A DNA stretch of 64,000 bases, taken from positions 1-64,000 of the IMG/VR virus record IMGVR_UViG_3300009108_000751. The stretch is one strand, 5' to 3'. This document shows positions 1 to 36,024 of this stretch, in pieces (position 1 is the stretch's first letter; every line of letters starts with the position of its first letter). A program made the position numbers and the translations under genes. The notes under the pieces were generated by a model, which saw only the letters and a list, made by a program, of their open reading frames with translations, was not told where the DNA came from and made no database searches.

Positions 1-655
1 GGTTAACGCTTCCGCCGAATACCAGGTGAACGAGATGGATCCGGCACTTCGTGACCGCTTCTTCATCGTAGATCTGGAACCCACCACCGAGGATTGGCTC
101 GAGTGGGCTAAGGATCGCTTGGACGGTGCACTCTGCGAGTTCATCCGACAGAACCCACAACACTTGGAATGCCGGGAGAATGTTGAGGCAGATCGCATCA
201 CTCCTTCCCGCCGCTCTTGGGAGCGCGTCAATCACGCACTGGTCAATGCCAATGTGACGGACAAGCCCGAGGATCCGCTCTTCTACCCGCTCTGCCTCGG
301 CTTGGTCGGTGCAGAAGCTTCGATCGCCTACACGGAGTTCGTCAAGAAGTTCGACCGCCAGATCTCGGCAGAGGATATTCTGGACAAGTGGGGTAACAAG
401 GTCAAAGCTAAGGTGAAGGCTGCTCCTCAAGAGCAACTCAACGGTGTCGTCGAAAAGGTGGTTGACCACGCGGAAAACGGTGACTGGACCCAGAAGCAAG
501 TTGACAACGCGTTCAAGTTCATGAAGTCTCTTCCTGGTGAGTTGGTTATCTCAATGTGGACCAAGATCACGGATCGCAACTTCAAGAACGCCCAGAAGCT
601 TCACAAGCAATGCTCTCAGCTCCTGCTCGAAGTGATCGGTGAAACGAACAACTAA
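1..655 (+). CDS. MoxR/AAA_5-type AAA+ ATPase, C-terminal part (5' end outside window)
   Basis: Frame is open to the window edge (VNASAEYQVNEMDPALRDRF = sensor/arginine-finger region), TPSRRSWERV motif, upstream of a DUF2201/vWA gene. Confidence 0.75.
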   Translation, partial: VNASAEYQVNEMDPALRDRFFIVDLEPTTEDWLEWAKDRLDGALCEFIRQNPQHLECRENVEADRITPSRRSWERVNHALVNANVTDKPEDPLFYPLCLGLVGAEASIAYTEFVKKFDRQISAEDILDKWGNKVKAKVKAAPQEQLNGVVEKVVDHAENGDWTQKQVDNAFKFMKSLPGELVISMWTKITDRNFKNAQKLHKQCSQLLLEVIGETNN

Positions 656-656
656 G

Positions 657-887: not shown

Positions 888-888
888 T
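860..888 (+). promoter_or_regulatory. GTGTAA-N17-TATAAT promoter
   Basis: GTGTAA 860-865, TATAAT 883-888, AGGAGG and ATG 908 downstream. Confidence 0.8.
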
Positions 889-907
889 ATAAGCGCAAGG
901 AGGAAAC

Positions 908-1219
908 ATGCAGATTGGCGATCTTATCAAGCCCAAGATGCACCTGGAAGCGCTTAGAGAACCGCATAGAGAGGATCACGGCTTACTTGAAGTGCACACA
1001 CGTTGGGAAGATCCTAAGAAGGAGTTTAAGATTCTCAATAGTCACTCAGGCGAGTTGCATGCGGTTGCGATGATTGTCGGCACGGAACGTGTCCGCAGGC
1101 GCGATCGGCGCAATAAGTCAGGTATCGCGATGATGGTACCCAAGATCAAGTTGCTCATCGGCGGTCAAGTTGCTTTGATCACCAAGGGCAAGTTGGAACA
1201 CCTGTTTGAACCGGTGTAA
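908..1219 (+). CDS. hypothetical protein (SH3-like N-terminus MQIGDLIK)
   Basis: Strong SD AGGAGG; its stop codon is the TAA of the next GTGTAA box. Confidence 0.7.
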   Translation: MQIGDLIKPKMHLEALREPHREDHGLLEVHTRWEDPKKEFKILNSHSGELHAVAMIVGTERVRRRDRRNKSGIAMMVPKIKLLIGGQVALITKGKLEHLFEPV

Positions 1220-1242
1220 CTCTAAAACAGTATAGATATAAT
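1214..1242 (+). promoter_or_regulatory. GTGTAA-N17-TATAAT promoter
   Basis: GTGTAA 1214-1219, TATAAT 1237-1242. Confidence 0.8.
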
Positions 1243-1260
1243 AAGGGCGAAGGAGGCTTC

Positions 1261-2583
1261 ATGGCCAAGAAAGAATCAACCGGCGATCTTCCTAAAGCAG
1301 TTCAGGACTACATGGACAAGCTTAAGGTTTCGGCGGAAGAATACGCTCAAAAGGTAGAGGACGCTAAGTCTTTTGACATTGATCCTCACTTGGTTAAGCT
1401 CATGTGGGACGAACCGTTTTATAGCGCTATTAGCCGCCGGATCAGCAAGTCAAGAAGCCTTGACCTCCCGACCGCCGGCGTCTGTGTGATCGATGGTTCA
1501 CCTAGTCTGCTCTGGAACCCGGTCTTCTTCAACGAGATGACTGAGAAAGAGGTGCGCGGTGTCCTGATCCACGAGTTCATGCACTTGATCTACGACCACG
1601 TGACGCTGAGGAAGCGGGATCCCCACATGCTGTGGAACCTGGCCACCGACTGCGCGATCAATAGCATGATCCCAGAAAGCAACCTACCCGTGGACTGTGT
1701 GTTCCCCGGCAAGATGAACCCCAAGGCGGATCCCACCGACCCGATCTGGAATGCGATCGCCTCCTTCCCGAAAGGCCAGAGCTCTGACTGGTACATGAGC
1801 CGGCTGATGGAAGACGAGGACGTCCAGCAGAAGATGGAGGATATCCAGAACGGTGAGGGTGACGCAGCGGAATACGGCTTCGATGACCACGAGGGTTGGG
1901 GCGACATGAGTGACGCTGAGAAGGAGCTGGTGAAAGGCAAGATCCGCGAGATCCTGCGGGACGCGGTGAAGGAAGCTGACGCCAAGAACGGCTGGGGTTC
2001 GGTTCCCTCCGACTGCCGCGAGCAACTGCGCTCAATGGTGAGTAATGAGGTGGACTGGAAAGCGATCCTCCGGCAAACCATTGGCATGGCGCACAGCTCC
2101 GAGCGTACCACCTCCCGCAAGCGGCGCAACCGGAAGTACCGGTTCATGCATCCCGGCGTGAAACGCAAACGGATGGCGCGCGTCCTCGTCGCGATCGATC
2201 AATCGGGCTCCGTGGGTAATGAAGCCCTCGAGCTCCTGTTCGGTGAGCTGGCGTCCCTCGCAAAGCGAGTTGACTTCGACATCGTGCACTTCGACACCTC
2301 CGTGGATGAGAAGAGCCTGACCACCTGGCGGCGCGGACAACGCATCGCGCCCCACCGCACGCGGATGGGTGGTACCGACTTCAACGCTCCCACCGAGTTC
2401 GTCAACAAGCACAAGGGCCAATACGACCTGATGGTGGTGCTCACTGACGGTGAAGCTCCGGAGCCCAAGCCGTGCCTCGTGCGTCGAGCCTGGATCCTCG
2501 TCCCTGGAACCTCGATGTACTTCGACACCCCTGAGACGGTGATCAAGATGAAAGCTGAGAAAGATAAAAAGAATGCTGCGTGA
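1261..2583 (+). CDS. DUF2201-type metallopeptidase fused to a vWA domain
   Basis: HExxH (LIHEFMH), NLATDCAIN, C-terminal MIDAS DQSGS...GGT...LTDG; partner AAA+ gene upstream. Confidence 0.85.
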   Translation: MAKKESTGDLPKAVQDYMDKLKVSAEEYAQKVEDAKSFDIDPHLVKLMWDEPFYSAISRRISKSRSLDLPTAGVCVIDGSPSLLWNPVFFNEMTEKEVRGVLIHEFMHLIYDHVTLRKRDPHMLWNLATDCAINSMIPESNLPVDCVFPGKMNPKADPTDPIWNAIASFPKGQSSDWYMSRLMEDEDVQQKMEDIQNGEGDAAEYGFDDHEGWGDMSDAEKELVKGKIREILRDAVKEADAKNGWGSVPSDCREQLRSMVSNEVDWKAILRQTIGMAHSSERTTSRKRRNRKYRFMHPGVKRKRMARVLVAIDQSGSVGNEALELLFGELASLAKRVDFDIVHFDTSVDEKSLTTWRRGQRIAPHRTRMGGTDFNAPTEFVNKHKGQYDLMVVLTDGEAPEPKPCLVRRAWILVPGTSMYFDTPETVIKMKAEKDKKNAA

Positions 2584-20833: not shown

Positions 20834-20835
20834 GC

Positions 20836-22575: not shown

Positions 22576-24837
22576 ATGAAAATAAAACTAAATCTTAGCT
22601 CGCTGAATGAAGAACTAGAAACAAGCAAAGACCCACTTAACGAGGTACTAAGGCAATTAGGCAGCTTTTGGAAGCACCTCTCTACGGCTGGTAAATTAGT
22701 AAGACTTGACGACTTTGCAGACGTGGTTAGTAGATCAAGAAGAGTACTCGATAATCTTGAACTACCTAGAAAATTGGCCGCGGCAGGACTTGACAGTAAA
22801 GTCATTTTTAGAAATATTTTTGATTCTAACCCACAGCTTGAAAAACAAATGAATGAAGTTATTGCATCTGTTGTGGATCAACTAAGAAGAGGAGAAGCTG
22901 TCCCTCTCGGGGATGGAAGAACTTCTACAGGAGCTGCACGGATCTCTTTTGACGGAAGCGTAGATTTCCCGGAAGGCCTAATTGATGCTTCTGGAAAGCC
23001 TATTCCTAGCGGCCCTACCCCCATTAAAATTTACATGGCAATCGACAAAGACGGAGTTATTGAGGGATCTGCAGGTATCGGTGCAACAGGACGACGTCGT
23101 TCAATGAAGTCGTGGAAAGAAAGCGGAGGAAAAGCAAGTTCGGGTACCCGGGCGGCAACCCGAAGAGGTGCTGATGCTGCCGACCAGACCTCTTCCCTAC
23201 ACCCCGAGGATCTAAAGTGGTTGGAGGAGAATAACATCGATAATGCGTCTGCGAGAGAGTTCTATGAAAAGAAGGTGCTTAGTATCAGAACGACAATTGC
23301 ATCGGACCCGGCGGCCGCCGAGGTTTTGATTCCTTATTTGGAAGCAATTCAAACAATTGTTAAAAGAATACAAGATGGCAATGTGGTGGTTCTAAACGCA
23401 GATCAGACCAAGAAGATCTTCAACAAGATGGAAAACAAGATAGTTCAAGCAGCCGAAGATGCTGGCAAGATTAAGCCTGGTGAAGAATTATATCTTCCTC
23501 TAGTAGATGAGGCCGGAAGGGTAGTCATTAATCAAGATGGGCAAACGGCGATCATTGTCTTGGGAGAGGGTGAAACCGTTTATGCAACTGGTAGAGTAGC
23601 AGATATTAGATACACTAAGTCGGGACAGTCCAGGCTCTCAGGAGGAGGAGAGCTGAACGTGCTCAAGCTAGCTGACGAGCTCGGGGAGATGGTACAGGCT
23701 ATGGAAAACCTTAATAATGCTAACAGAACTTTTTATCAAGCGTGGAAAAGATTTCAAGAACGATGGGAAGCGGCCGGAGACGACAGGTGGCGTAAATTTG
23801 ATATTCTTCTTAAATGGAGGGAGGAGGCCTGGGAAGGGTATAAGAATATTTTTAATCAAGAGTTTAAATTATGGATGGTACCCTGGGCAGATGATGCAAT
23901 CAAGTTCAGTGATCTACCTGCCTGGAAGAAAGCTATGGCCGGTGTTGATTTCTTTGGCGGGTTTGGTGGGACAAAGATGTTCGCGGCTGGGTTGACCTCG
24001 ATCCTACGATCATCAGGAAAAGTGTCCAGATCTTATGGGTTAGGTGCATCAAGAAGTGCTGCAAAGCTATTTCTAGTGATACAGGGTAGCTACTACGCGA
24101 TGATGACTTTCTGGATTATAACGTACATCTTGTCAGACAGCCTCGAGGAAGAGAGAAAAAACTATGAATTTGTCATGAATCCTCCGGAGGGTGCTGATGC
24201 TCGAAAACTTCTAATTGAGTACCTCCATAGCCTAACGGATTTTTATAAAAAACATAATGAGGTCATGCCAAAATGGAATGTGGATATGTCTCTACAGCAA
24301 CTTCGATATGCTGTCAAAGAAACTCATAAAAATTATTTAAAGATTGTTGAGGATAAGTCCGGGGCTTCTCCAGCGGAAATATATTCCTTTCACCAAAATG
24401 TTGGTATTCCATTAATTCCTGATAGTGTCTGGGATTTGGTAGAGAATTATTATGGTGATGTTGAAAATATTGCTGATCTTTCTCCTGAAGATCGAAAGAT
24501 AGCTAATGATGAACATCGGGAAGCAGGAAGCGCTCTTGATAAAATCCAGCAAACTTCTGATGATGCTCTCGAAAAGGTTCGAGGGCTAGGGGTGGATTTC
24601 GGTGTAGGAAAAGAAAAGGCAAAGAGGGGTCAGAAACCTAGGCCTAAGATTGATCCTAAAGCTAAAACACCAACACAGGGAACACCAAGCGATCCGGGCA
24701 CACAGGATAGCTCTTTAGGAGATCTATCTGGGATTGATGATTCCCTTTTTGAAATCTTTAACACTGGAAAACCTATAAGTATTAAAGTTAAAAGCTCCTC
24801 GCCGCGGGTGAGAGTTAATATTACGGAGAAGAAGTAA
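22576..24837 (+). CDS. large hypothetical protein, probable virion/ejected protein
   Basis: 753 aa, MKIKLNLSSLNEE N-terminus, internal hydrophobic helices. Confidence 0.6.
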   Translation: MKIKLNLSSLNEELETSKDPLNEVLRQLGSFWKHLSTAGKLVRLDDFADVVSRSRRVLDNLELPRKLAAAGLDSKVIFRNIFDSNPQLEKQMNEVIASVVDQLRRGEAVPLGDGRTSTGAARISFDGSVDFPEGLIDASGKPIPSGPTPIKIYMAIDKDGVIEGSAGIGATGRRRSMKSWKESGGKASSGTRAATRRGADAADQTSSLHPEDLKWLEENNIDNASAREFYEKKVLSIRTTIASDPAAAEVLIPYLEAIQTIVKRIQDGNVVVLNADQTKKIFNKMENKIVQAAEDAGKIKPGEELYLPLVDEAGRVVINQDGQTAIIVLGEGETVYATGRVADIRYTKSGQSRLSGGGELNVLKLADELGEMVQAMENLNNANRTFYQAWKRFQERWEAAGDDRWRKFDILLKWREEAWEGYKNIFNQEFKLWMVPWADDAIKFSDLPAWKKAMAGVDFFGGFGGTKMFAAGLTSILRSSGKVSRSYGLGASRSAAKLFLVIQGSYYAMMTFWIITYILSDSLEEERKNYEFVMNPPEGADARKLLIEYLHSLTDFYKKHNEVMPKWNVDMSLQQLRYAVKETHKNYLKIVEDKSGASPAEIYSFHQNVGIPLIPDSVWDLVENYYGDVENIADLSPEDRKIANDEHREAGSALDKIQQTSDDALEKVRGLGVDFGVGKEKAKRGQKPRPKIDPKAKTPTQGTPSDPGTQDSSLGDLSGIDDSLFEIFNTGKPISIKVKSSSPRVRVNITEKK

Positions 24838-25196
24838 TGAAGATCAATGCGACACAACTGAGGAAGATTATCCTCCAAGAGATGTGCGATATGCACCGCC
24901 AACATGACACACATGATCAAGGTCATGAAGATTTAATGTCTGCAGTAATGGTCGCTGCTGGTGATTGCCCAATCAAGGCCAGAGCTCTTCTTCAAAGAAT
25001 GCTGCAGCATGTTGAACCCAGGGCTCATGAGAAAGAAGCGGGTATGCGTCAAGATATCCCTAATCCTGCAACTTCTGGTGAAATTCCTCGAGGTGAAAGA
25101 CTGATGGGTGACGATGCTTACATGGAGCAAAAGAAACCTACTGCAGTTGATGGACCAGGATTCTCTAAGGGCATATTTGGCCCTGGATTTAGATAA
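24837..25196 (+). CDS. probable internal head protein
   Basis: MKINATQLRKIILQE N-terminus; TAATG coupling. Confidence 0.55.
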   Translation: MKINATQLRKIILQEMCDMHRQHDTHDQGHEDLMSAVMVAAGDCPIKARALLQRMLQHVEPRAHEKEAGMRQDIPNPATSGEIPRGERLMGDDAYMEQKKPTAVDGPGFSKGIFGPGFR

Positions 25197-25251
25197 AAAA
25201 ATTATACGTTCTCTCTTTTCTCTGTAATTATAAAATAAGAGAGAATGAGCC

Positions 25252-25548
25252 TTGAGCAAGATACCATCTCACAAAAAACAATCTAAAGCTCTTAAGAAAA
25301 AGAGAAAAGATAAACAGAGATATCAGAGAATTAATAAGAAGAAAGAATCTGAGAAGATCTTTCAAAAAGAGATGTCTAGACAATTAGAAAAAGTAGAGAA
25401 TTTTATCTCTAACATGCCTAAATCTTGCACATCTTGTAGTAAGCAATTTGATCCTTCAAGCGATGACCATCTAGATGATTGGAATCTCACGATATCAGAG
25501 GGTGCAATGTCTTTAGTTTGCAAGGAATGCGGAGAAGGTAATGACTGA
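25252..25548 (+). CDS. basic protein with CxxC...CxxC zinc motif
   Basis: CTSC...CKEC. Confidence 0.55.
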   Translation: MSKIPSHKKQSKALKKKRKDKQRYQRINKKKESEKIFQKEMSRQLEKVENFISNMPKSCTSCSKQFDPSSDDHLDDWNLTISEGAMSLVCKECGEGND

Positions 25549-25783
25549 ACGTAGAAGATTCAATCCCCAAACTATGGCAAAAGAACTTGCCTACATTAAA
25601 CTTAAGATCAATGAGGTCTTAACTAACGATGATATGCCCGTCATGGGAAAAGATATCGATAAGATAAATAGAGAGATTGAATTTCTGCGTGAGAATCAAA
25701 AGTCCCTAAAGAAAAATACTTCTCTTCTAGTCTGGTGCGTACCTGTTCTACTTTTTATCGATATTTTACTAAGATTTTTTTAG
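25541..25783 (+). CDS. small protein with C-terminal TM helix
   Basis: SD GAAGG; LLVWCVPVLLFIDILL. Confidence 0.55.
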   Translation: MTERRRFNPQTMAKELAYIKLKINEVLTNDDMPVMGKDIDKINREIEFLRENQKSLKKNTSLLVWCVPVLLFIDILLRFF

Positions 25784-25896
25784 CTAAAAATTATAACTTC
25801 TCTTTTCCTGTAAGAAGTTTTTAAACCTAGTCTGTCACCTGGTTTAAGCATCACAAAGCACCAGCGGCTTATATTTACATTTGTGAGGAGAATAAA

Positions 25897-26352
25897 ATGC
25901 CAGAGCTACCCACAGCTATACTGAATAAGTTGTCTCAGATCGAGTCCCTGCTTAGTTCTTCACACGTTCTTAATGGTGGCTTTGAAAAACTGGTTCAAGA
26001 CGTTCAGCATACTAATGATCAGCTCGGCGAAGTCAAAGAATCCTTAGAAGCTATGAATAACACCATTAATGATCCGGAGAGTGGGGTTCGATCCCGTGTA
26101 AGAGACTTAGAGGCAGAATCTCAGAGGCGTTGGCTATTTGTCCAAGAAGCCCAGCATAAGATGGATGAATTTGACGATCTCCTCTCATGGAAAAGAGATG
26201 TTGAAGACAAGGTAAAAACTATTGATCTTCATAACTTAGAGCTAGATAGGCTCAAAATATGGCAGTCCAATCTTAGTAAATTGCAATGGCTTTTCGGTTC
26301 GACACTCGCCATCCTTATAATTCAAGCGCTTTTTGGGGTATTATTACCTTAA
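25897..26352 (+). CDS. coiled-coil protein with C-terminal TM helix
   Basis: SD GAGGAG; heptad repeats. Confidence 0.65.
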   Translation: MPELPTAILNKLSQIESLLSSSHVLNGGFEKLVQDVQHTNDQLGEVKESLEAMNNTINDPESGVRSRVRDLEAESQRRWLFVQEAQHKMDEFDDLLSWKRDVEDKVKTIDLHNLELDRLKIWQSNLSKLQWLFGSTLAILIIQALFGVLLP

Positions 26353-26358: not shown

Positions 26359-27528
26359 ATGAGTACTTTTAGAAAACACAAATCTATAGCAGATCGATCA
26401 GCCACCGATCGATCGCGCCATAAGCAAAAAATTGAAAAAGCTTTAAAAGAAGGTATTCGAAATATCGTTGCCGAAGAGTCCATTATTGGCCAAGATGGTA
26501 AGAAAAAAGTTCGGATTCCTGTAAAGGGCATAAAAGAATACCAATTTATCTACGGTGACAACTCTAAAAAGGTTGGTTCCGCACCGGGCAAAGATATTCA
26601 CAGAGGTCAAAAGATTGCTGAGGATAAGGAAGGCAAGAAATCAGGTAACAAGCCTGGGGATAAACCAGGTGAGGAGTTCTACGACGTAGAGATTACATTA
26701 GAGGAGCTTGCAGAATACCTCTTTAGTGATCTTGAGCTTCCTGATCTAGATAAGAAGAAATTTAAGTTTCTGTCGTCCGACACTTTTAGAAGAAAAGGTG
26801 TTCGGCCTAAAGGTATTAGGCCGCGCCTCTCTAAGAAAGAGACTCTTAAACAGAAGATTCGTCGAAAGAAAATGTCTCAAAAAGCTGGGACCTTTAACGA
26901 AGAAGAAGATGAAAGATTTCCTTTTCATGAAGATGATCTTCGATACAAGCATTTCAAAGTAAAAGAAACAGAGATCTCATCTGCAGCAATATTTTTCATT
27001 ATGGATATCTCAGGTTCAATGAGTACTGAAAAGAAGTACATTGCCCGGAGCTTCTTCTTTCTTCTCTACCAGTTTTTGCGACACAAATATGATAATGTTG
27101 AAGTTGTATTTATTGCTCATACAACCACGGCAAAAGAAGTCAGTGAGAATGATTTCTTCAGTCTAGCACCATCCGGTGGAACATTTATCTCACCTGCACT
27201 TGATCTTACACTCGAGGTCGTTGAGAAAAGATATCACCCCAGCAATTGGAATATATACTCTTTTCATTGTTCAGATGGGGATAACTGGTCAGAAGATGAG
27301 GAAAAAGCTTTCAATGCTTCTAAGAAACTTAAGTCAATATCACAGCTTTACGCTTTTTGTGAAATAGATCCTAACGGTGAGTCATCACAGTGGCGCCAGA
27401 ATAATAATTCTAGAATGTGGGAAATTTATCAACCACTTGTAGACAAAGCTTTTAAGACTTTAAAGATGGTTAATGCTAAAGATATCTGGCCTTCATTTAA
27501 GAAGCTTTTTGGTGGGAGATCAGAATAA
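26359..27528 (+). CDS. yeaH: YeaH/YhbH (DUF444) vWA protein
   Basis: DRSRHKQKI, VRIPVKG, DDLRY, MDISGSM (MIDAS), SGGT, SDGDNW. Confidence 0.9.
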   Translation: MSTFRKHKSIADRSATDRSRHKQKIEKALKEGIRNIVAEESIIGQDGKKKVRIPVKGIKEYQFIYGDNSKKVGSAPGKDIHRGQKIAEDKEGKKSGNKPGDKPGEEFYDVEITLEELAEYLFSDLELPDLDKKKFKFLSSDTFRRKGVRPKGIRPRLSKKETLKQKIRRKKMSQKAGTFNEEEDERFPFHEDDLRYKHFKVKETEISSAAIFFIMDISGSMSTEKKYIARSFFFLLYQFLRHKYDNVEVVFIAHTTTAKEVSENDFFSLAPSGGTFISPALDLTLEVVEKRYHPSNWNIYSFHCSDGDNWSEDEEKAFNASKKLKSISQLYAFCEIDPNGESSQWRQNNNSRMWEIYQPLVDKAFKTLKMVNAKDIWPSFKKLFGGRSE

Positions 27529-28835
27529 TGGGATGGACATTTGAAGAACTCCATGCATGGGACGAAAAAATTGTTAAGCTAGCCAAGAAATATAACCTTG
27601 ACTGGTATCCAATTGACTACGAAGTTTGCGACTATCATGATATGATCGGTTACATGTCATACATTGGAATGCCCACTCACTACCAGCATTGGTCGTACGG
27701 CAAGTCCTTTGAACGAACACACACCATGTATAACCTCGGCATGGAGGGATTACCCTACGAGATGATCATCAATAGCGATCCCTCGATATCGTATTTGATG
27801 ACTGAGAACCCTCTTCCTTTGCAAGTTCTTATCATGGCACACTGCGTTGGTCACTCCGACTTCTTCAAAAATAATCGGATGTTTAAGCATACCGATGCAG
27901 CTAATGTGATATCAAGGTTTCGTAATTCTGCAAAGAGGATCAAGAAATATTCTGACAATCCTCACATCGGTGTTGAAGCTGTTGAAAAAGTAATAGATGC
28001 ATGTCATGCTTTAAAGTATCATAACTATCGCGAGTTTGGAATTAGTCGAAAATCTCATCAAGAAATAAAGCAAGCCTATGTTGATATTGCTAACTTTAAA
28101 CCTGAGAAACTCCCAGAAGATTTTGATATCAATAAGATCCCATTAGAGCCTGACTATGATATTCTTGGATTTATAGGAAAACATTCTAGAAATTTAGAGG
28201 ACTGGGAAAGAGATATTATTGATATTGTTCGTCAAGAATCAATGTACTTTATGCCGCAGGCAATGACAAAAATAATGAATGAAGGATGGGCATCATTTTG
28301 GCACTATAAAATAATGTCAGAGCTTGATCTCCCGCAAGAGTTTCACTTGTCTTTTCTTAAATTTCATAATCAGGTTCTCCGGCCAATGGTAGGAAGAATT
28401 AATCCCTATCATCTAGGATTCACAATTTTTAAATGGATTGAGAAAAATAAAGGGCTAGAGGAATGTTTTATAGCAAGGTCTTCTCATAATGACGAATCTT
28501 TTATCAGGTCATATCTCAACAAAGAAATATGTGAAGAACTTAATCTTTTCTCTTACTCTAAAAAGAAAAAAGAATGGACGATAGACGATATATCGGATCA
28601 AGATGGCTGGAAACAGATTAGATCCGATCTCATAAAAAATGTAGGCCTTAACTCTTTGCCAAATATTTATGTCAAGGAGCTTCAAAAGGATCAAACGCTG
28701 GTTTTAGAACACGAGCATGATGGTAGGGATCTAGATCTAGATTACGCACACAATGTATGTGATCATCTTTTAGACCTGTGGGGCGATGACTTTAAATTCT
28801 TTACTGTTATCGAAGATGAGCCTTTCGAGATTTAA
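27528..28835 (+). CDS. spoVR: SpoVR/YcgB family protein
   Basis: HWSYGK, YEMIINSDP, MAHCVGHSDFFKNN, TKIMNEGWASFWH, NPYHLG. Confidence 0.92.
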   Translation: MGWTFEELHAWDEKIVKLAKKYNLDWYPIDYEVCDYHDMIGYMSYIGMPTHYQHWSYGKSFERTHTMYNLGMEGLPYEMIINSDPSISYLMTENPLPLQVLIMAHCVGHSDFFKNNRMFKHTDAANVISRFRNSAKRIKKYSDNPHIGVEAVEKVIDACHALKYHNYREFGISRKSHQEIKQAYVDIANFKPEKLPEDFDINKIPLEPDYDILGFIGKHSRNLEDWERDIIDIVRQESMYFMPQAMTKIMNEGWASFWHYKIMSELDLPQEFHLSFLKFHNQVLRPMVGRINPYHLGFTIFKWIEKNKGLEECFIARSSHNDESFIRSYLNKEICEELNLFSYSKKKKEWTIDDISDQDGWKQIRSDLIKNVGLNSLPNIYVKELQKDQTLVLEHEHDGRDLDLDYAHNVCDHLLDLWGDDFKFFTVIEDEPFEI

Positions 28836-28881
28836 ACTCCTACATATTAGTGTGTATTATTGAAAGTGTGGAGCATCAAGA

Positions 28882-30813
28882 ATGACTAAATCTAAATTTG
28901 CTGATTTAATTAGCCAGCAGAGATCTGAAAAGAAGGATGTATCCTTTAAGGGTACTTTTCTAGAATATCTGGAAGTTGTTGAGAAAAATCCAAAGATTGC
29001 AGCCTTGGCTCATAGAAGACTTTTTGATGTTCTTGCAGAAGACGGTATTGAAGTACTAGATGAAACAGATGAGAGATGCCGCCGCCTATTTGATAGTGAA
29101 AAGACAAAGACTTACAACTATTTCCAACCGCATTTCTTCGGCATGGAAAGATCTCTAGCAAAAGTGATGAGATTCCTCAGTTCTGCTGCTATGAAGGGTG
29201 AGGAAAGTCGACAAGTACTTCTACTCCTAGGCCCGGTCGGCGCCGGAAAATCTGCCCTGATCGAACACATTAAAAGAGGCCTAGAAAGAGCAGAGCATAT
29301 CTATCATTTAGATGGCTGCCCAATCAGAGAAGAACCTCTACATCTCGTACCTCGCTCTCTCCGCAGCAAGTTTGAGGAAATGCTCGGCATTAAAATAGAA
29401 GGCGATCTTTGCCCTGTATGTCGACACCGACTTTTAGAAGAGTTTGGTGGGAAATATGAGAATTTTCCTGTAAAACAATCCTCTTTCTCAATTAGAGGTA
29501 GAAGAGGTGTAGGTGTTGTACCCCCTGTCGATGCCAACACTCAAGATACTTCAATTCTTATAGGCTCAGAGGACATCTCGAAGTTGGATCTGTATCCCGA
29601 GGATGATCCCAGAGTGCTTTCCTTGAACGGGGCCTTTAATGTTGGTAACAGAGGTATCGTTGAGTTCGTAGAGGTCTTTAAGAATGAGATTGAATTTCTA
29701 CACACAATGATCACGGCAACACAGGAGAAGGCAGTTCCCTCTCCTGGTAAAGGTGCCATGATTTACTTTGACGGTGTCATCCTTGCACACTGCAACGAAG
29801 CGGAATGGAACCGATTTAAATCCACACACACAAATGAAGCTATACTTGATCGAATCGTCAAGGTTAATGTCCCGTACTGCCTAGAACTTGACGAGGAGGT
29901 AAAGATTTACCAGAAGATGTTGAAGATGTCTGATTTCGATGCCCACATTGCACCACACACACTTGAGGTTGCATCGATGTTTGCAGTTATGTCTCGATTA
30001 AAACCTTCTGGTAAAGTTGATCCTTTGGTTAAGATGAAGATTTATAACGGGGAGGACATCATCGAAAAGGGAAGAGTCAAGAAGGTCGACATCAAAGATC
30101 TTCGTGAGGAATCCCGCGATGAAGGTATGACCGGTATCTCAACACGCTTCATCACCAAAGCGATCGATTCAGCGCTTTCTGATTCTGATAGAAATATGGT
30201 TACCCCAATTTCAGTTAGAGATTCCCTTATCAAGCAAGTCAAAGAACAGATTATCGATGAGGAAGCTAGAGAGCGCTATCTCCAATACCTTCAAAAAGAT
30301 CTTCATGAAGAATACTTAAGGATCTTGGAGAAGGAGATTACCAAGGCTTTTGTAAGTGCTTACGAAGAACAAGCAGAGGCCCTTTTTGATAACTACCTTG
30401 ATCATGCCGAGGCTTATGTTAATAAGTCAAGAGTAAAAGATAAGGTGACACGTGAAGAGATGGAGCCAGATGAAAACTTCATGAAATCCATCGAGGAAAA
30501 TATTGGCATTACAGGCTCTGCTAGAGACGGATTTAGATCTGATGTTACTACTTACATGTTTACTCTTCTTCGCGCTAAAAAGAAGATTGACTGGAAAGCT
30601 TATGGCCCTCTCAAGGAAGCCATTGAGAATAAACTGATGTCATCTGTAAAAGATATGTCCAGAATTGTTACAAAGTCAAAATCCCGCGATAATAAACAGC
30701 AAAAGAAATACGGTGATATGGTGTCTACGCTTATCGAAGACTACGGCTACAATGAAGATTCTGCAGAAGAAGTAATTAAATTTGCGGCCAATAATCTCTG
30801 GAGAGATGGTTAA
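28882..30813 (+). CDS. prkA: PrkA/YeaG AAA+ ATPase / serine kinase
   Basis: FFGMER, Walker A GPVGAGKS, CPIREEPL, NRGIVEFVEVFK, EAILDRI, EGMTGISTRF. Confidence 0.92.
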   Translation: MTKSKFADLISQQRSEKKDVSFKGTFLEYLEVVEKNPKIAALAHRRLFDVLAEDGIEVLDETDERCRRLFDSEKTKTYNYFQPHFFGMERSLAKVMRFLSSAAMKGEESRQVLLLLGPVGAGKSALIEHIKRGLERAEHIYHLDGCPIREEPLHLVPRSLRSKFEEMLGIKIEGDLCPVCRHRLLEEFGGKYENFPVKQSSFSIRGRRGVGVVPPVDANTQDTSILIGSEDISKLDLYPEDDPRVLSLNGAFNVGNRGIVEFVEVFKNEIEFLHTMITATQEKAVPSPGKGAMIYFDGVILAHCNEAEWNRFKSTHTNEAILDRIVKVNVPYCLELDEEVKIYQKMLKMSDFDAHIAPHTLEVASMFAVMSRLKPSGKVDPLVKMKIYNGEDIIEKGRVKKVDIKDLREESRDEGMTGISTRFITKAIDSALSDSDRNMVTPISVRDSLIKQVKEQIIDEEARERYLQYLQKDLHEEYLRILEKEITKAFVSAYEEQAEALFDNYLDHAEAYVNKSRVKDKVTREEMEPDENFMKSIEENIGITGSARDGFRSDVTTYMFTLLRAKKKIDWKAYGPLKEAIENKLMSSVKDMSRIVTKSKSRDNKQQKKYGDMVSTLIEDYGYNEDSAEEVIKFAANNLWRDG

Positions 30814-30827: not shown

Positions 30828-32153
30828 ATGAGATCCCGAGTAGAGAGAAAAAATCTAAAGAAGGAATCAAGACAGTTCTTAAAAAACCTTGAAGCTCTTA
30901 CTCGTATTCAAGAGCGCAACTCAAAGGTTGCATTTTTAATGTCTAATTCCCCAAGAACTTCTGGAAGCATTCTTCTTTCTTTGCTTTCTTATTCACCTGC
31001 AAACAGAACTGAAAATATTTTCAAGCAGATCGTGATTAATCACGTCTTAAAATGTGAAAAAACATCTGCAATGTCATCTTCTACTATGATTAAAATGCTT
31101 ATAGACCTAACCAGGAAATCTGATAATCTAAGCAGCATGGGTATCAAAGATAAAGAAAAATCTATAAGAAAAGATGTAGATGACATATTTGATGCCATTC
31201 AGGAAAAAATGTCTAGGCCAACTTTGAGAACCTTAGAGGATTACCTAAAAATAAATTTTGACAAAACAACATCTTCTCTTGTTTTGGAGTCTCTAAAATT
31301 ATCAGGAATGTCAGGAAAGTTATCTTTTGAGCATAGCAATATTCCTAATCCCATTATAGAATCTAATGCCAGCTATATCTTTGAAATAGAACCAGACCCT
31401 AACCTTCTTTTACAGTCAGACTTCATGTGGGCAAAAAAAGATGTTTCTGTCTTGTGCATAGAAGGCTTTATAGAAAAAGTTTCCGAAATAGATGTAATAC
31501 TTTCTTCATTAGCAGAAAGAAAAGGTAATGCAGTCATTATCTGTCTCGGATACTCTCCTGAAGTTGTCTCAACTATTATAGCGAACAACGCCCGCGGAAC
31601 ATTTAATGTAATGCTTTGTAAGCCCAGCCAAGAAGAAGAAGCCATAAATGATATTTTCGACATGTCAGCCGCATCAGGATCATGCTTCTACGGATTCCAG
31701 ACAGGTACAATATCTACTTCATTTTCTCCCGAGCACCTAGATAGCACAAATGAAGAGGTCGTAATAACTGAGAATAAGATAAGCATCAAAAGCTCTATAT
31801 CCAAGAATTCTGCTAACACAAGGGCAGAAAAGATAAGAGAGCAGCTCGGTGAGAGTGATTTAAAAGATGACTACCTTAAAAGAAGAATAACCTCGCTTAC
31901 ATCCAACCAGGTTAAAATAAATCTGCCTGAAAAAACGTCACAGGAAAAATTTAGTCAAATTGAGAAAATTGATACTGCACTTAGATGTGCCAATGCGATT
32001 ACTAGATTTGGGATAATCGATATTCCGGAATCAAGCATTATACCAGGTAGCGGACGACAGATAGCATCTTCAATTTACATTGGATGCAAATATGGATATG
32101 AATTATTTAAGCAGTTATCTTCTATCGACACTGCGATCGTTTTAGATGACTAA
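30828..32153 (+). CDS. groEL: divergent GroEL/chaperonin-60 homologue lacking ATPase motifs
   Basis: Apical and intermediate domains align by eye (VLCIEGFIEKVSEI..IL, VIICLGYSPEV..TIIAN..RG, KRRITSL, IDTALRCA..GII); no GDGTTT or GPKG. Confidence 0.7.
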   Translation: MRSRVERKNLKKESRQFLKNLEALTRIQERNSKVAFLMSNSPRTSGSILLSLLSYSPANRTENIFKQIVINHVLKCEKTSAMSSSTMIKMLIDLTRKSDNLSSMGIKDKEKSIRKDVDDIFDAIQEKMSRPTLRTLEDYLKINFDKTTSSLVLESLKLSGMSGKLSFEHSNIPNPIIESNASYIFEIEPDPNLLLQSDFMWAKKDVSVLCIEGFIEKVSEIDVILSSLAERKGNAVIICLGYSPEVVSTIIANNARGTFNVMLCKPSQEEEAINDIFDMSAASGSCFYGFQTGTISTSFSPEHLDSTNEEVVITENKISIKSSISKNSANTRAEKIREQLGESDLKDDYLKRRITSLTSNQVKINLPEKTSQEKFSQIEKIDTALRCANAITRFGIIDIPESSIIPGSGRQIASSIYIGCKYGYELFKQLSSIDTAIVLDD

Positions 32154-32390: not shown

Positions 32391-32867
32391 ATGAAAAGTG
32401 CTGAGAAGCATTTAATTCAATGCCACTGTATTCTGCCCCAGTACAGAGGCAAGCCAGACCCTGTTTTTCATAAGTTTACAGTTTTTTCTATTCTTGAAAA
32501 CGATAAGGTAGTTGAAAAGCTGGCACAGTGTCCAAACTGCGGCGTCATTCACAAAGTTGTAGATGTTTGCAAAAGTGAGATTGCGTCAGGAAAAGATGAA
32601 ACAAAGTCTATCATTGAAATTAAAGACATTAAGTTCGGATTACCACCTCGCCTAGTTGAAATTCTAGAATCCTATAGCTGTGATCTTCCTGCATGGGAGC
32701 ATGCACAGTTTATATTAGATGAAAAAAGGTGGGGAGAAAAAGTAAGAGTTTCCTACGAGGAAAATGAGGATGATACTTTTGCAAAGTTTCTGGTATTTGT
32801 AGATGAAGACCAGTATAGGATATCTTCGTCATCAAGTCAAAGCTTTTTAGGAGATAGTGATGAGTGA
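32391..32867 (+). CDS. hypothetical Cys/His zinc-binding protein
   Basis: QCHC...QCPNCGVIHKV.D.C. Confidence 0.6.
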   Translation: MKSAEKHLIQCHCILPQYRGKPDPVFHKFTVFSILENDKVVEKLAQCPNCGVIHKVVDVCKSEIASGKDETKSIIEIKDIKFGLPPRLVEILESYSCDLPAWEHAQFILDEKRWGEKVRVSYEENEDDTFAKFLVFVDEDQYRISSSSSQSFLGDSDE

Positions 32868-34710: not shown

Positions 34711-36024
34711 GTGAAAAAGACATTTATTCTTGATACTAACGTTCTTCTCTATGATGCAGAATGTCTGCTGTCCTTTGATGATAATAATATAATCATTCCT
34801 CTAATTGTTTTAGAAGAATTAGATGATCATAAGCGCAGACCTGACGAAGTAGGAAAAAATGCGCGAAAATCAGTTAGGCTTCTCGATAAGTTTAGAGAGA
34901 AAGGATCCTTAAGCGAAGGGATCGAGCTGGATAGCGGCGGAACGCTTACTATCCTGGGAAGCGAACAGATTACATGTCCTTTCCCAGCAGACTTAGATAA
35001 AAGCTCTGTAGATAACGTAATTCTTGCGATGACAAAATGCCTCCAAGATACTCGAGAAGAAAAAGTAATACTTGTAACAAAGGACATAAACGTAAGAGTG
35101 AAATGTGATGCCCTGGGAATCACATGTGAAGATTTCAATAAGCACAAGATAATCGACAAATCAGAAGGGCTTTACACAGGGGTAAGGAGGCTAAGTGCGC
35201 CGCAATCCTTGATTGACAAAGTCTATACAGATCGAGAGATACCTGTCCCTGAAGAAATCATTGGTGAAGAACTTTACGCAAACGAATTCATAGTAATGAA
35301 AGATGAAAGTACCGGTCAGGGCTCAGCAATCGTTCGACATATTAAGAAATCTAATACGCTCAGACTTATTCCAGAAATAAAAAGCTCCTGGGGCTTAATT
35401 CCTAGAAACAAGGAGCAGAAATTTTCATTTGATATACTTTTCGATGACAATATTAAGCTCATTACGTTGGTAGGAAAAGCCGGAACTGGGAAAACGTTGC
35501 TTGCAGCATCTGCAGCACTAGAGCAAGCATTCTCTAAAGACGGTAAGTATAAAAAGGTGGTTATCTCCCGCCCCGTCCAGGCTGTAGGCAAAGATATCGG
35601 ATATCTCCCGGGAGATATCTACGATAAGATGGCACCCTGGATTGCACCAATAAGGGACAATCTCCGGTATCTTTTCGGAGACGATAAAGACACGCTGGAC
35701 ATGTACATTGAAAGCGGAAAGATAGAGATTGAAGCCATAACTTACATCAGAGGAAGATCGATCTCCGACGCGATTATAATAATTGATGAAGCACAAAATC
35801 TAACAACTCATGAGCTTAAGACAATCATCACCCGGGTAGGTGAAAACACAAAGATAATATTGACAGGTGATGTTGATCAAATCGATAATACATACCTGGA
35901 TGCCACATCAAACGGCTTAAGTTACACGGTGGAAAAATTTAAAGAATATGATATTTCTGCACATGTAACGCTCTTAAAGGGTGAAAGATCAGAGCTGGCA
36001 AGCTTAGGCGCTGAAATCCTATAA
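34711..36024 (+). CDS. phoH: PIN-PhoH (PhoH2/YlaK-type) ATPase
   Basis: FILDTNVLL, VLEELD, TKDIN; GKAGTGKT, RGRS, IIDEAQN, GDVDQID. Confidence 0.92.
   Translation: MKKTFILDTNVLLYDAECLLSFDDNNIIIPLIVLEELDDHKRRPDEVGKNARKSVRLLDKFREKGSLSEGIELDSGGTLTILGSEQITCPFPADLDKSSVDNVILAMTKCLQDTREEKVILVTKDINVRVKCDALGITCEDFNKHKIIDKSEGLYTGVRRLSAPQSLIDKVYTDREIPVPEEIIGEELYANEFIVMKDESTGQGSAIVRHIKKSNTLRLIPEIKSSWGLIPRNKEQKFSFDILFDDNIKLITLVGKAGTGKTLLAASAALEQAFSKDGKYKKVVISRPVQAVGKDIGYLPGDIYDKMAPWIAPIRDNLRYLFGDDKDTLDMYIESGKIEIEAITYIRGRSISDAIIIIDEAQNLTTHELKTIITRVGENTKIILTGDVDQIDNTYLDATSNGLSYTVEKFKEYDISAHVTLLKGERSELASLGAEIL

What the first reader, a model, noticed from the sequence alone, without database searches (positions are those of the whole stretch)
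26359..30813. Complete YeaH-SpoVR-PrkA triad in a phage, in permuted order
Seen: three full-length genes with intact motifs, ordered yeaH-spoVR-prkA, between virion-type genes and a chaperonin. Known: bacteria usually carry prkA(yeaG)-yeaH(-spoVR/ycgB), linked to nitrogen starvation and stationary phase in E. coli and to sporulation in Bacillus; the mechanism is poorly understood. Inference: the phage may reprogramme host dormancy or protein quality control. The SpoVR motifs HxxGH and NEGWA look metallopeptidase-like, so the triad would parallel the AAA+/vWA/HExxH module at 1-2583, giving two such machines in one window.
Basis: partly seen in the sequence, partly recalled or inferred. Interest (0 to 1): 0.72.

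Follow-up and report, generated by a model that had tools for sequence, protein, structure and literature searches.

The report
Phage copy of bacterial starvation-proteolysis trio
A large marine T4-like phage carries a complete, strongly conserved copy of the bacterial PrkA/YeaG-YeaH-SpoVR starvation module, with the ATPase gene moved to the end. It most likely helps the phage break down or remodel host proteins, but such trios were already annotated in other phages.

Summary
The contig is a 236-kb IMG/VR virus record with a T4-type capsid, portal and terminase.

The trio is not unique. At least 146 marine viral contigs carry it at 65-100% identity, and every complete locus among the 80 examined has the same yeaH-spoVR-prkA order. 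Thermus phages (phiYS40/TMA, Lalka, MN1, phiLo) share that order. RsoM2USA and several huge phages keep the bacterial order, prkA-yeaH-spoVR.

The nearest cellular homologues are 58-63% identical, mostly Bacillota, and have the bacterial order in 73 of 80 loci. All three genes are under strong purifying selection (dN/dS 0.02-0.05).

New leads:
- SpoVR residues 1-340 fold like a zincin metallopeptidase. All 50 best structural matches are zincin-type. The motif is HxxxH, without the catalytic Glu.
- YeaH's N-terminal 88 residues are predicted to bind SpoVR (ipSAE 0.81, best control 0.00).

Best reading: an ATP-driven protein-turnover machine that recycles host protein, by analogy with YeaG-dependent starvation proteolysis in E. 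coli. This is inferred, not shown.

Verdict: new member of a known kind.

The parts
26359..27528 (+). YeaH / DUF444 gene (389 aa). Its stop codon overlaps the spoVR start by 1 nt (TAATG).
   Evidence: Pfam DUF444 E 1.2e-111. 30% identical to E. coli YeaH. The stop/start overlap is seen in 67 of 77 viral loci.
26359..26622 (+). YeaH N-terminal segment (aa 1-88), predicted to bind SpoVR.
   Evidence: complex prediction interface residues 1-7, 12-24, 42, 53-88; ipSAE 0.81 against a best control of 0.00. Invariant R13, D17, R20, H21, E40, G44, P54, E60.
27004..27018 (+). YeaH vWA MIDAS motif, D216-I-S-G-S220. T275 and D306 complete the motif.
   Evidence: Invariant in an alignment of 86 sequences; sequence read.
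27528..28835 (+). SpoVR / YcgB gene (435 aa).
   Evidence: Pfam SpoVR E 2.2e-126 plus SpoVR_C. AlphaFold2 model pLDDT 93.5.
27528..28547 (+). SpoVR zincin-like domain (aa 1-340).
   Evidence: VIA-align against 48,161 PDB chains: all 50 best matches of the domain-only model are zincin-type (peptidase families M1, M2, M3, M4, M9, M30, M32, M36, M49 and M61, plus DUF885, the zincin carboxypeptidase MATCAP, TAF2 and YbeY). Z 12.0 to 6.4. The full-length model gives the same picture.
27840..27854 (+). SpoVR H105-C-V-G-H109 on helix 96-115. This is an HxxxH motif with no Glu after the first His.
   Evidence: H105 and H109 are invariant in 88 sequences. Helix assignment.
28278..28292 (+). SpoVR N251-E-G-W-A255 on helix 248-265. 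E252 is the candidate third metal ligand.
   Evidence: N251, E252, G253, A255 and H259 are invariant. Inteins in some SpoVR homologues split the protein at about this point.
28882..30813 (+). PrkA / YeaG-family AAA+ protein gene (643 aa).
   Evidence: Pfam AAA_PrkA E 1.6e-147 and PrkA C-domain E 1.3e-81. Solved homologue 9xip, E 5e-101. 33% identical to E. coli YeaG.
29230..29253 (+). PrkA Walker A motif, GPVGAGKS (aa 117-124).
   Evidence: G117, P118, G120, K123 and S124 are invariant.
30828..32153 (+). Divergent, shortened GroEL-like protein (441 aa). It follows prkA in about a quarter of related viral loci.
   Evidence: PDB GroEL E 1.5e-7 over GroEL residues about 110-411. PHROG GroEL E 1e-13. 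No Pfam hit. Its nearest ESM Atlas clusters are viral ones, the 9th-ranked carrying Cpn60_TCP1. Synteny.
32391..32867 (+). Small conserved protein (158 aa) that often accompanies the trio. Function unknown.
   Evidence: Present downstream of prkA in about 35 of 80 viral loci. No family match.
34711..36024 (+). PIN-PhoH protein, a frequent downstream neighbour of the trio.
   Evidence: Pfam PIN_4 E 1.5e-30 and PhoH E 2.1e-50. Synteny.
2..655 (+). C-terminal part of a phage ATPase, cut by the contig end. It is the first half of the second ATPase/vWA/metallopeptidase module.
   Evidence: phrog_1297 'ATPase' E 2.2e-24, profile positions 149-344 of 356.
1261..2583 (+). DUF2201 protein: a putative zincin metallopeptidase domain fused to a vWA-like domain.
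   Evidence: Pfam DUF2201_N E 1.2e-16, DUF2201 E 2.7e-10, SprT-like E 4.8e-5.

Best explanation
This is a phage-borne, functional copy of the conserved bacterial PrkA(YeaG)-YeaH-SpoVR(YcgB) module. It is fixed as a unit in a large clade of marine T4-like jumbo phages. The order is a cyclic permutation that keeps the yeaH-spoVR junction and puts prkA last.

Proposed mechanism (inferred). YeaH and SpoVR are made in coupled translation and form a heterodimer. The conserved YeaH N-terminus lies against the zincin-like domain of SpoVR. The YeaH vWA/MIDAS domain is left free, perhaps to dock on the PrkA AAA+ ring as vWA partners do in other AAA+/vWA pairs. PrkA supplies ATP-driven unfolding or remodelling.

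During infection the machine turns over host cytoplasmic protein. This releases amino acids and energy for virion synthesis in nutrient-poor hosts. The model is YeaG-dependent starvation-induced proteolysis in E. coli.

Shown here: gene content, intact motifs, phage context, clade-wide conservation and purifying selection. Predicted here: the zincin-like fold and YeaH-SpoVR binding. Inferred only: proteolytic activity, substrates, any PrkA-YeaH contact and the benefit to the phage.
For: Identity and completeness.

Phage context.

Conservation:
- 146 IMG/VR stretches encode relatives. The 80 kept loci are 65-100% identical, and every complete one has yeaH-spoVR-prkA.
- More than 120 protein clusters at 72% identity or higher come from marine metagenomes, on contigs up to 373 kb.
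- The DNA itself is found in seawater runs from many studies.

Selection: dN/dS 0.02-0.05 for each gene.

Unit inheritance: the viral clade is one side of a branch in the PrkA, YeaH and SpoVR trees, SH-aLRT 100, 98 and 99.

Coupling: the yeaH stop overlaps the spoVR start in 67 of 77 viral loci.

Predicted complex: ipSAE 0.81, best of 3 controls 0.00. That mark was reached by 58 of 80 solved complexes and 2 of 110 mismatched pairs. Neither protein has a sequence relative in the PDB, so the pass is unlikely to come from memory.

Fold: zincin-type matches only.

Literature:
- yeaG, yeaH and ycgB have conserved cofitness in six bacteria (10.1101/072470).
- YeaG is required for global starvation-induced cytoplasmic proteolysis (PMC13684143).
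- B. subtilis PrkA shows slow ATP-dependent caseinolysis and no kinase activity (PMC9512850).
- B. anthracis PrkA alone has negligible protease or kinase activity (PMC13001217). This fits a need for partner proteins.
Against: - No activity was measured for any phage protein.
- SpoVR lacks the catalytic Glu of HExxH (HCVGH here, HVYGH in the consensus).
- Foldseek found no significant PDB match, and hhalign against E. coli PepN found nothing.
- The Z scores (12 or less) lie in a range that helical proteins can reach by chance. The fold call therefore rests on the uniformity of the hits.
- I could not read model coordinates, so the closeness of H105, H109 and E252 is unverified. The zinc included in the complex job was not scored.
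- The complex calibration holds only roughly, because I used my own unpaired alignments.
- E. coli YeaG, on which the proteolysis analogy rests, is only 33% identical. Roles for YeaH and YcgB in that proteolysis have not been published.
- B. subtilis SpoVR crosslinks to RNA in vivo (PMC12456014), which points elsewhere.
- The host is unknown, and no RNA run holds this sequence.
Confidence: 0.4

Rival explanations
1. A signalling or dormancy-control module. The trio acts as a regulatory pathway (kinase or pseudokinase plus partners) that shifts the infected cell into, or holds it out of, a stationary-phase-like state. It does not degrade protein in bulk.
For: YeaG was first described as a kinase. 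Price et al. interpreted the conserved cofitness of the three genes as a signalling pathway (10.1101/072470). YeaG is under RpoS and NtrC control (PMC2686479, PMC13684143). A starvation-type PIN-PhoH gene lies next to the trio.
Against: No kinase activity was found for B. subtilis or B. anthracis PrkA (PMC9512850, PMC13001217). The E. coli yeaG deletion phenotype is a loss of bulk proteolysis (PMC13684143). A zincin-like SpoVR and a vWA partner fit a machine better than a signalling cascade.
Confidence: 0.15
2. A machine directed at RNA or ribonucleoprotein. SpoVR binds RNA and may be a YbeY-like metallo-nuclease. Together with PrkA, YeaH and the neighbouring PIN-PhoH protein it remodels or degrades host RNA-protein complexes such as ribosomes.
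For: B. subtilis SpoVR crosslinks to RNA in vivo (PMC12456014). YbeY and AQ_1354 metallo-endoribonucleases are among the structural matches, Z 7.3-7.4. HxxxH without Glu resembles the His-only motif of YbeY (that comparison is from my own knowledge). PIN-PhoH is a conserved neighbour.
Against: The best structural matches are peptidases, Z 10-12. The YbeY matches cover only about 105-120 residues. A phage needs host ribosomes. RNA binding was shown for one distant homologue only.
Confidence: 0.15
3. Selective counter-defence or takeover protease. The machine removes particular host proteins, such as defence factors, regulators or host proteases, rather than bulk protein.
For: AAA+/vWA/peptidase architectures recur in conflict systems (my own knowledge). 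A second ATPase plus vWA-metallopeptidase pair lies in the same window.
Against: No PADLOC family matches any of the three proteins. The module is a near-universal bacterial housekeeping and stress system, not an accessory conflict gene. No target is known.
Confidence: 0.12
4. A phage-internal role in virion assembly or maturation, as a head-associated ATPase and protease.
For: In Thermus phage Lalka8 the trio lies between the portal and minor-head genes and TerL. In TMA it lies near TerL.
Against: In this genome the trio is about 85 kb from the terminase, portal and capsid block. It sits among non-structural genes. The proteins are orthologues of a cellular stress module.
Confidence: 0.05
5. 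An inert passenger or an assembly artefact, that is, host DNA joined to a phage contig.
For: GC content shifts from 50-55% (1-20 kb) to 38-43% (25-70 kb) within the contig.
Against: Eighty independent viral contigs share the trio and its flanks. One identical contig spans the GC shift from about 20.8 kb onward. Purifying selection is strong. The viral clade is monophyletic and at most 63% identical to any cellular PrkA.
Confidence: 0.02

Closest known systems
[quoted passage not shown]
   Same: The same three Pfam families at full length, with Walker A, MIDAS and SpoVR motifs intact. Identity to the nearest Bacillota-type homologues is 58-63% for PrkA and about 45% for YeaH and SpoVR.
   Different: It is encoded by a lytic-type T4-like phage. 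The order is yeaH-spoVR-prkA, not prkA-yeaH-spoVR (0 of 80 nearest cellular loci have the phage order). It forms its own clade. It is only 30-33% identical to the E. coli proteins that have been studied.
Thermus phage trios (phiYS40, TMA, YS40_Isch, Lalka8/27a/27b, MN1, phiLo)
   Same: A phage-encoded YeaH-SpoVR-PrkA set in the same permuted order.
   Different: Only 34%, 27-32% and 23% identical for PrkA, YeaH and SpoVR. They sit on a separate long branch. TMA has an extra gene between spoVR and prkA. They lie next to packaging and head genes. The hosts are thermophiles.
Ralstonia phage RsoM2USA and huge uncultured phages (LR745206, LR756504, LR756511; LR756502 shows PrkA-YeaH only)
   Same: Jumbo phages that carry the module. 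PrkA and SpoVR are noted in the RsoM2USA paper (PMC8504454).
   Different: They keep the bacterial order. RsoM2USA PrkA groups with E. coli YeaG, which suggests a separate acquisition.
ATPase plus vWA-metallopeptidase (DUF2201) pairs, as at window 2-2583
   Same: An ATPase, a vWA domain and a zincin-type domain together. The predicted YeaH-SpoVR heterodimer would be a split version of the fused DUF2201 protein.
   Different: Different families. DUF2201_N matches SprT-like HExxH peptidases, whereas SpoVR has HxxxH. A functional equivalence is inferred, not tested.
Gluzincin metallopeptidases (M1 aminopeptidases/LTA4H, M3, M32, thermolysin M4, DUF885)
   Same: The fold of SpoVR residues 1-340: strands, then a helix carrying two His, then a later helix carrying an invariant Glu. 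Z is 8-12 over 160-190 residues.
   Different: No Glu follows the first His. About 140 residues separate the His helix from the Glu helix. No sequence-level similarity was found. Metal binding is untested.
Lon and FtsH AAA+ proteases
   Same: The proposed logic of ATP-dependent protein degradation. PrkA has weak similarity to the Lon ATPase region (E 0.026; PMC9512850).
   Different: No Lon Ser-Lys protease domain and no FtsH-type fused HExxH domain. Any peptidase function would sit on a separate subunit.

Membership tests
PrkA/YeaG family | N-terminal AAA_PrkA domain (PF08298) above the gathering score | tested here: met
   491.7 bits against a cut-off of 25; profile 2-358 of 358.
PrkA/YeaG family | C-terminal PrkA domain (PF06798) | tested here: met
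   274.5 bits; profile 3-255 of 255.
PrkA/YeaG family | Walker A P-loop with the Lys that B. subtilis PrkA needs for activity (K108 there) | tested here: met
   GPVGAGKS at residues 117-124; G117, P118, G120, K123, S124 are invariant. The requirement for the Lys comes from PMC9512850.
PrkA/YeaG family | ATP hydrolysis and ATP-dependent proteolysis | not testable with these tools
   Needs biochemistry.
YeaH / DUF444 | DUF444 (PF04285) above the gathering score | tested here: met
   374.2 bits against a cut-off of 27.
YeaH / DUF444 | vWA-type MIDAS motif, DxSxS...T...D | tested here: met
   D216, S218, S220, T275 and D306 are invariant in 86 sequences.
SpoVR / YcgB | SpoVR (PF04293) and SpoVR_C (PF24755) domains | tested here: met
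   422.4 and 32.8 bits. The model matches ESM Atlas and AlphaFold DB SpoVR clusters at TM 0.8-0.97.
PrkA-YeaH-SpoVR operon (the system) | All three genes adjacent and on one strand | tested here: met
   Gaps of -1 nt and 46 nt.
PrkA-YeaH-SpoVR operon (the system) | Canonical order with prkA first | tested here: not met
   The order here is yeaH-spoVR-prkA. The 80 nearest cellular loci have prkA first (73 with all three genes).
PrkA-YeaH-SpoVR operon (the system) | The three proteins act in one pathway or complex | tested here: inconclusive
   Only YeaH-SpoVR was modelled: ipSAE 0.81 against a control of 0.00. PrkA contacts were not tested. Cofitness data exist for bacteria only (10.1101/072470).
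Zincin (gluzincin) metallopeptidases, for SpoVR | Zincin catalytic-domain fold | tested here: met
   All 50 best VIA-align matches are zincin-type, Z 12.0-6.4. The full-length model agrees. Foldseek was not significant, so the support is moderate.
Zincin (gluzincin) metallopeptidases, for SpoVR | HExxH motif with a catalytic Glu | tested here: not met
   The motif is H105-C-V-G-H109, consensus HVYGH; there is no Glu.
Zincin (gluzincin) metallopeptidases, for SpoVR | Third metal ligand (Glu) on a following helix, close to the two His | tested here: inconclusive
   E252 in NEGWA is invariant and lies on helix 248-265. Coordinates could not be read, so residue equivalence and distances are unknown.
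Zincin (gluzincin) metallopeptidases, for SpoVR | Bound zinc and peptidase activity | not testable with these tools
   Zinc was included in the complex job but not scored.
Group I chaperonin (GroEL), for 30828-32153 | Cpn60_TCP1 domain over its full length, including both halves of the equatorial ATPase domain | tested here: not met
   No Pfam hit even at E 1. The match to GroEL covers only GroEL residues about 110-411. At 441 aa it is much shorter than the solved GroEL/Hsp60 chains it matches (about 520-550 residues). It is GroEL-like only.
T4-like (Gp23-type) tailed phage, for the contig | T4-type major capsid protein, portal and large terminase | tested here: met
   Gp23 E 1.1e-63, Portal_T4 E 2.7e-77, Terminase_6N E 3.1e-16. 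The nearest capsid proteins belong to Flavobacterium phage immuto (45%) and LR756508 (50%).
Known anti-phage defence systems | Match to a PADLOC model | tested here: not met
   No hit for YeaH, SpoVR or PrkA.

The most novel reading that the evidence does not exclude
PrkA-YeaH-SpoVR is a previously unrecognised three-subunit ATP-dependent protease. SpoVR would be an atypical zincin whose active site is completed or gated by the N-terminal arm of YeaH. PrkA would be the unfoldase, docked through the YeaH vWA domain. A cosmopolitan clade of marine jumbo phages, and independently the Thermus phages, would carry their own copy to liquidate host proteome into amino acids and ATP for virion production in starved cells. 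This would be the protein counterpart of phage-driven host-DNA recycling.
Probability: 0.2. Interest if true: 0.8.

Novelty: new member of a known kind. Interest (0 to 1): 0.5.

Why it matters
The YeaG/PrkA-YeaH-YcgB/SpoVR trio is one of the most widespread bacterial stress modules, and its biochemistry is still unresolved. In October 2026 YeaG was shown to be required for global starvation proteolysis in E. coli (PMC13684143). The roles of YeaH and YcgB remain unknown.

Many marine jumbo phages keep the whole trio under strong selection. That suggests the three proteins are sufficient as a unit and useful during infection.

The two computational leads found here apply to the whole family. They turn an open question into bench experiments:
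- a zincin-like SpoVR with conserved His, His and Glu;
- a confidently predicted YeaH-SpoVR complex.

For marine virology, it suggests that spoVR hits counted as 'sporulation' auxiliary genes in viromes are misnamed. They would belong to a protein-turnover module.

Tried and rejected
- Megablast of the trio against 50,697 phage records: no match. Only protein-level relatives exist there.
- Foldseek of the SpoVR model against the PDB: best E 0.2, not significant. ESM Atlas and AlphaFold DB searches returned only the SpoVR family itself, plus one marginal DA1 peptidase fragment.
- hhalign of the SpoVR profile against E. coli PepN: no similarity.
- PDB sequence search for SpoVR and YeaH: nothing.
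- PADLOC: no defence family for the trio.
- Promoter and terminator scans of 19-36.5 kb: counts no higher than in shuffled sequence, so no operon boundaries could be drawn.
- Upstream genes 19850-26352: no Pfam or PHROG family even at relaxed thresholds, so 'virion-type' could be neither confirmed nor refuted.
- Terminase_6C gave no hit, but Terminase_6N did.
- RNA evidence:
  - No RNA run holds this DNA.
  - Four marine metatranscriptomes hold short contigs 80-95% similar to all three genes.
  - These come from relatives, and DNA carry-over cannot be excluded, so expression is not shown.
- Literature: no paper in the searchable library treats PrkA as a viral auxiliary gene. My search for SpoVR together with zincin or metallopeptidase terms listed no SpoVR paper among the top results.
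- The zinc ion added to the complex job was not scored, so the metal site remains untested.
- Sporulation control as the function: set aside. The clade comes from seawater metagenomes, and the module is common in non-sporulating bacteria (10.1101/072470).

Full report
**1. What is there**

The window is the first 64 kb of a 235,681-bp linear IMG/VR virus record that CheckV estimates to be about 70% complete.

| ORF | Length | Pfam result |
|---|---|---|
| 26359-27528 | 389 aa | DUF444/YeaH, E 1.2e-111 |
| 27528-28835 | 435 aa | SpoVR, E 2.2e-126, plus SpoVR_C |
| 28882-30813 | 643 aa | AAA_PrkA, E 1.6e-147, plus PrkA C-domain, E 1.3e-81 |

All profiles are covered almost end to end.
- PrkA Walker A, GPVGAGKS (117-124).
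- YeaH MIDAS, D216xS218xS220 with T275 and D306.
- SpoVR H105-C-V-G-H109 and N251-E-G-W-A255.

These residues are invariant in alignments that combine phage and bacterial homologues. The yeaH stop codon overlaps the spoVR start by one base (TAATG). spoVR and prkA are 46 nt apart.

**2. Is it a phage?**

Yes. The same contig encodes a T4-type major capsid protein at 122.8-124.5 kb (E 1e-63). It also encodes a T4-type portal at 115.7-116.9 kb (E 3e-77) and a large-terminase N-domain at 114.1-114.7 kb (E 3e-16). The closest capsid proteins belong to the huge uncultured phage LR756508 (50%), Flavobacterium phage immuto (45%) and Microcystis phage Mel-JY01 (44%).

Two flank labels are weaker than stated:
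- The genes at 19850-26352 match no family.
- The 'chaperonin' at 30828-32153 is a shortened, divergent GroEL-like protein whose nearest ESM Atlas clusters are viral.

**3. Distribution and gene order**

A scan of IMG/VR with the PrkA protein found 146 confirmed stretches. The 80 best loci are 65-100% identical. Every one that is not cut by a contig end has yeaH-spoVR-prkA on one strand. A GroEL-like gene, a 158-aa gene and a PIN-PhoH gene often follow.

A protein search returned more than 120 clusters at 72% identity or higher, from ENA, JGI and Tara metagenomes, on contigs up to 373 kb. The DNA itself is present in marine and seawater runs from many studies. This is therefore a widespread clade of marine jumbo phages.

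In one genome per prokaryotic species, the 80 nearest PrkA genes are 58-63% identical and mostly from Bacillota, with some Binatia and deltaproteobacterial MAGs. Of these loci, 73 of 80 have prkA-yeaH-spoVR. None has the phage order.

The permutation is cyclic. It preserves the yeaH-spoVR junction.

Among deposited phage genomes, 17 records hold a PrkA relative.

| Phages | Order |
|---|---|
| Thermus phages: TMA, Lalka8, MN1, phiLo (loci examined) | yeaH-spoVR-prkA (TMA has one extra gene before prkA) |
| RsoM2USA, LR745206, LR756504, LR756511 | prkA-yeaH-spoVR (bacterial order) |
| LR756502 | prkA-yeaH in the stretch fetched |
| Enterobacter phage LAU1 | yeaG-yeaH at the very end of the record |

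phiYS40, YS40_Isch and Lalka27a/27b also hold PrkA relatives. Their gene order was not checked here.

**4. Evolution**

In trees of PrkA, YeaH and SpoVR the marine viral sequences form one side of a branch, with SH-aLRT 100, 98 and 99. They lie beside the Bacillota-type bacterial sequences. RsoM2USA PrkA groups with E. coli YeaG. The Thermus phages form a separate long branch.

The simplest reading is at least three phage lineages of the module, with the trio inherited as a unit inside the marine clade. The bacterial sample was chosen as the best matches to the query, so the exact sister group is not established.

Between the window and relatives at 84-94% amino-acid identity, dN/dS is 0.02-0.05 for each gene. 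dS is near saturation, but pN is far below pS. The genes are functional in the phage.

**5. What is known about the module**

- The three genes have strongly conserved cofitness in six bacteria, r above 0.7 (10.1101/072470). They were linked earlier by genome context (PMC2686479).
- B. subtilis PrkA is an ATPase with slow ATP-dependent caseinolytic activity and no kinase activity (PMC9512850).
- B. anthracis PrkA alone has negligible protease and kinase activity (PMC13001217).
- E. coli YeaG (renamed SpdA) is required for largely non-specific, starvation-induced degradation of cytoplasmic proteins, which supplies amino acids and ATP (PMC13684143).
- A PrkA homologue has been solved (9xip, 9xiq, 9xir; E 5e-101). 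YeaH and SpoVR have no sequence relative in the PDB.
- B. subtilis SpoVR crosslinks to RNA in vivo (PMC12456014).
- spoVR has been counted as the most abundant 'sporulation' auxiliary gene in viromes from a marine oxygen minimum zone (PMC8940887).

**6. New structural leads**

*SpoVR fold.* An AlphaFold2 model of phage SpoVR, built from 88 aligned homologues, has mean pLDDT 93.5.
- Foldseek finds nothing significant in the PDB.
- Exhaustive alignment with VIA-align gives zincin metallopeptidase catalytic domains almost exclusively:
  - the top matches are DUF885, M3, M1/LTA4H, M32 and thermolysin;
  - others include M30, M36, M61, ACE, collagenase, MATCAP, the M1-like TAF2 and the metallo-RNase YbeY;
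  - Z runs from 11.7 down to 6.2.
- A separate model of residues 1-345 reproduces this. All 50 best matches are zincin-type, Z 12.0-6.4, with 160-190 residues aligned.
- The secondary structure fits the zincin plan. Strands 29-34 and 86-91 come first, then helix 96-115 carrying H105 and H109, and later helix 248-265 carrying E252 and H259.
- The Glu of HExxH is absent, and about 140 residues separate the two helices.
- Inteins in some SpoVR homologues split the protein at about residues 254-258, inside NEGWAS. Inteins typically sit in functionally critical motifs (my own knowledge).

I could not read coordinates, so the geometry of the putative metal site is not verified.

*YeaH-SpoVR binding.* A complex prediction of SpoVR, zinc and YeaH gave ipSAE 0.81, against 0.00 for the best of three controls.
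- That mark was reached by 58 of 80 solved complexes and 2 of 110 mismatched pairs.
- The counts hold only roughly, because I supplied my own alignments and a zinc ion rode along.
- The interface uses YeaH residues 1-88, not the vWA domain.
- On SpoVR it uses strand 28-34, the invariant H54-K59 loop, residues 85-103 and 286-296, and the C-terminal domain.
- The yeaH stop overlaps the spoVR start in 67 of 77 viral loci, and the junction survives the permutation. Both facts fit a stoichiometric pair.

**7. Interpretation**

The best-supported mechanism is an ATP-driven protein-turnover or remodelling machine. PrkA would be the motor. A YeaH-SpoVR heterodimer would be the partner that provides or gates a metal-dependent activity. 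The free vWA/MIDAS domain of YeaH is a plausible dock for the AAA+ ring.

The phage would use the machine to convert host protein into amino acids and energy in nutrient-poor cells. Every step beyond gene content, conservation, predicted fold and predicted YeaH-SpoVR binding is inference. I give it 0.4.

Rivals:
- a signalling or dormancy role (0.15);
- an RNA or ribonucleoprotein-directed role suggested by SpoVR-RNA crosslinking, the YbeY-like matches and the PIN-PhoH neighbour (0.15);
- selective proteolysis for takeover or counter-defence (0.12);
- a role in virion assembly (0.05);
- passenger or artefact (0.02).

**8. The second module**

Window 2-655 is the C-terminal part of a phage ATPase family (phrog_1297, E 2e-24). 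Window 1261-2583 is a DUF2201_N putative metallopeptidase fused to a vWA-like domain. The predicted YeaH-SpoVR dimer would be a split version of the DUF2201 fusion. Functional equivalence is not shown.

**9. Novelty and score**

Phage-encoded PrkA/YeaH/SpoVR, including the permuted order, is already present in annotated Thermus phage genomes and in PHROGs. Viral spoVR has been noted in marine viromes. This finding is therefore a new member of a known kind: a large marine clade that I could not find described as carrying the trio.

The value lies in two things:
- the scale of conservation in phages;
- two testable leads on a long-unresolved bacterial module, made timely by the 2026 YeaG proteolysis result.

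Interest is 0.5.

Noticed in passing
window 36046-64000: An unbroken + strand run of about 28 ORFs forms a large glycan-biosynthesis island inside the phage. It includes several GT2 and GT1/GT4 glycosyltransferases, GDP-mannose 4,6-dehydratase (E 1e-130), methyltransferases, a carbamoyltransferase and a NeuB nonulosonic-acid synthase (E 5e-73).
   Followed up: partly
window 1-25000 compared with 25000-64000; whole contig G000: GC content is 50-55% in the first 20 kb. It drops to 38-43% from about 25 to 70 kb, which covers the trio and the glycan island. It is 43-50% in the rest of the genome. An identical independent contig (L005) covers the junction from about 20.8 kb. The cause is unexplained.
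   Followed up: partly
window 2-655 and 1261-2583: A second ATPase plus vWA/metallopeptidase pair: a phrog_1297 ATPase, cut by the contig end, and a DUF2201_N + DUF2201 protein. PHROGs labels the latter family (phrog_1314) 'HNH endonuclease', which looks like a misannotation.
   Followed up: partly
window 30828-32153: A 441-aa GroEL-like protein whose nearest ESM Atlas clusters are viral. It matches GroEL only over about residues 110-411, so it appears to lack the C-terminal half of the equatorial ATPase domain. I saw no clear GDGTT-type nucleotide motif by eye. It follows prkA in about a quarter of related loci.
   Followed up: partly
window 34711-36024: A PIN-PhoH fusion protein (PhoH2-like, by my own knowledge). 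It is a conserved downstream neighbour of the trio in many viral loci. It has weak PADLOC hits to helicase-type defence proteins (Nhi, AbiO) through its P-loop region only.
   Followed up: no
SpoVR homologues in AlphaFold DB and ESM Atlas (not in the window): Some SpoVR proteins, commonest in Chloroflexota, carry LAGLIDADG/DOD inteins. The split maps to about residues 254-258 of the phage protein, inside the invariant NEGWAS motif (row 2; rows 12 and 18).
   Followed up: no
window 29317-29427 (PrkA residues about 146-182): A Cys-rich pair of motifs, GCPIREEPLH and CPVCRH. It is shared with the solved homologue 9xip and with Thermus phage PrkA, but is absent from E. coli YeaG and RsoM2USA PrkA. 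It may be a small zinc-binding insert in the AAA+ domain of this subfamily.
   Followed up: no
window 25897-26352: A 151-aa protein immediately upstream of yeaH. It looks like a coiled coil, with only weak hits to tropomyosin and SNARE-type profiles, and ends in a hydrophobic segment. It is conserved upstream of the trio only in the closest relatives.
   Followed up: no
L004 (Thermus phage Lalka8) 869-10352: In Lalka8 the trio lies between the portal and minor-head genes and TerL. That is inside the packaging and head block, unlike in the marine clade.
   Followed up: no
L175 (Enterobacter phage LAU1) 1-3308: yeaG-yeaH sit at the extreme end of a 30.8-kb lambdoid phage record, next to tail-fibre genes. 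This looks like host flank included in a prophage-derived record rather than a phage-borne module.
   Followed up: no
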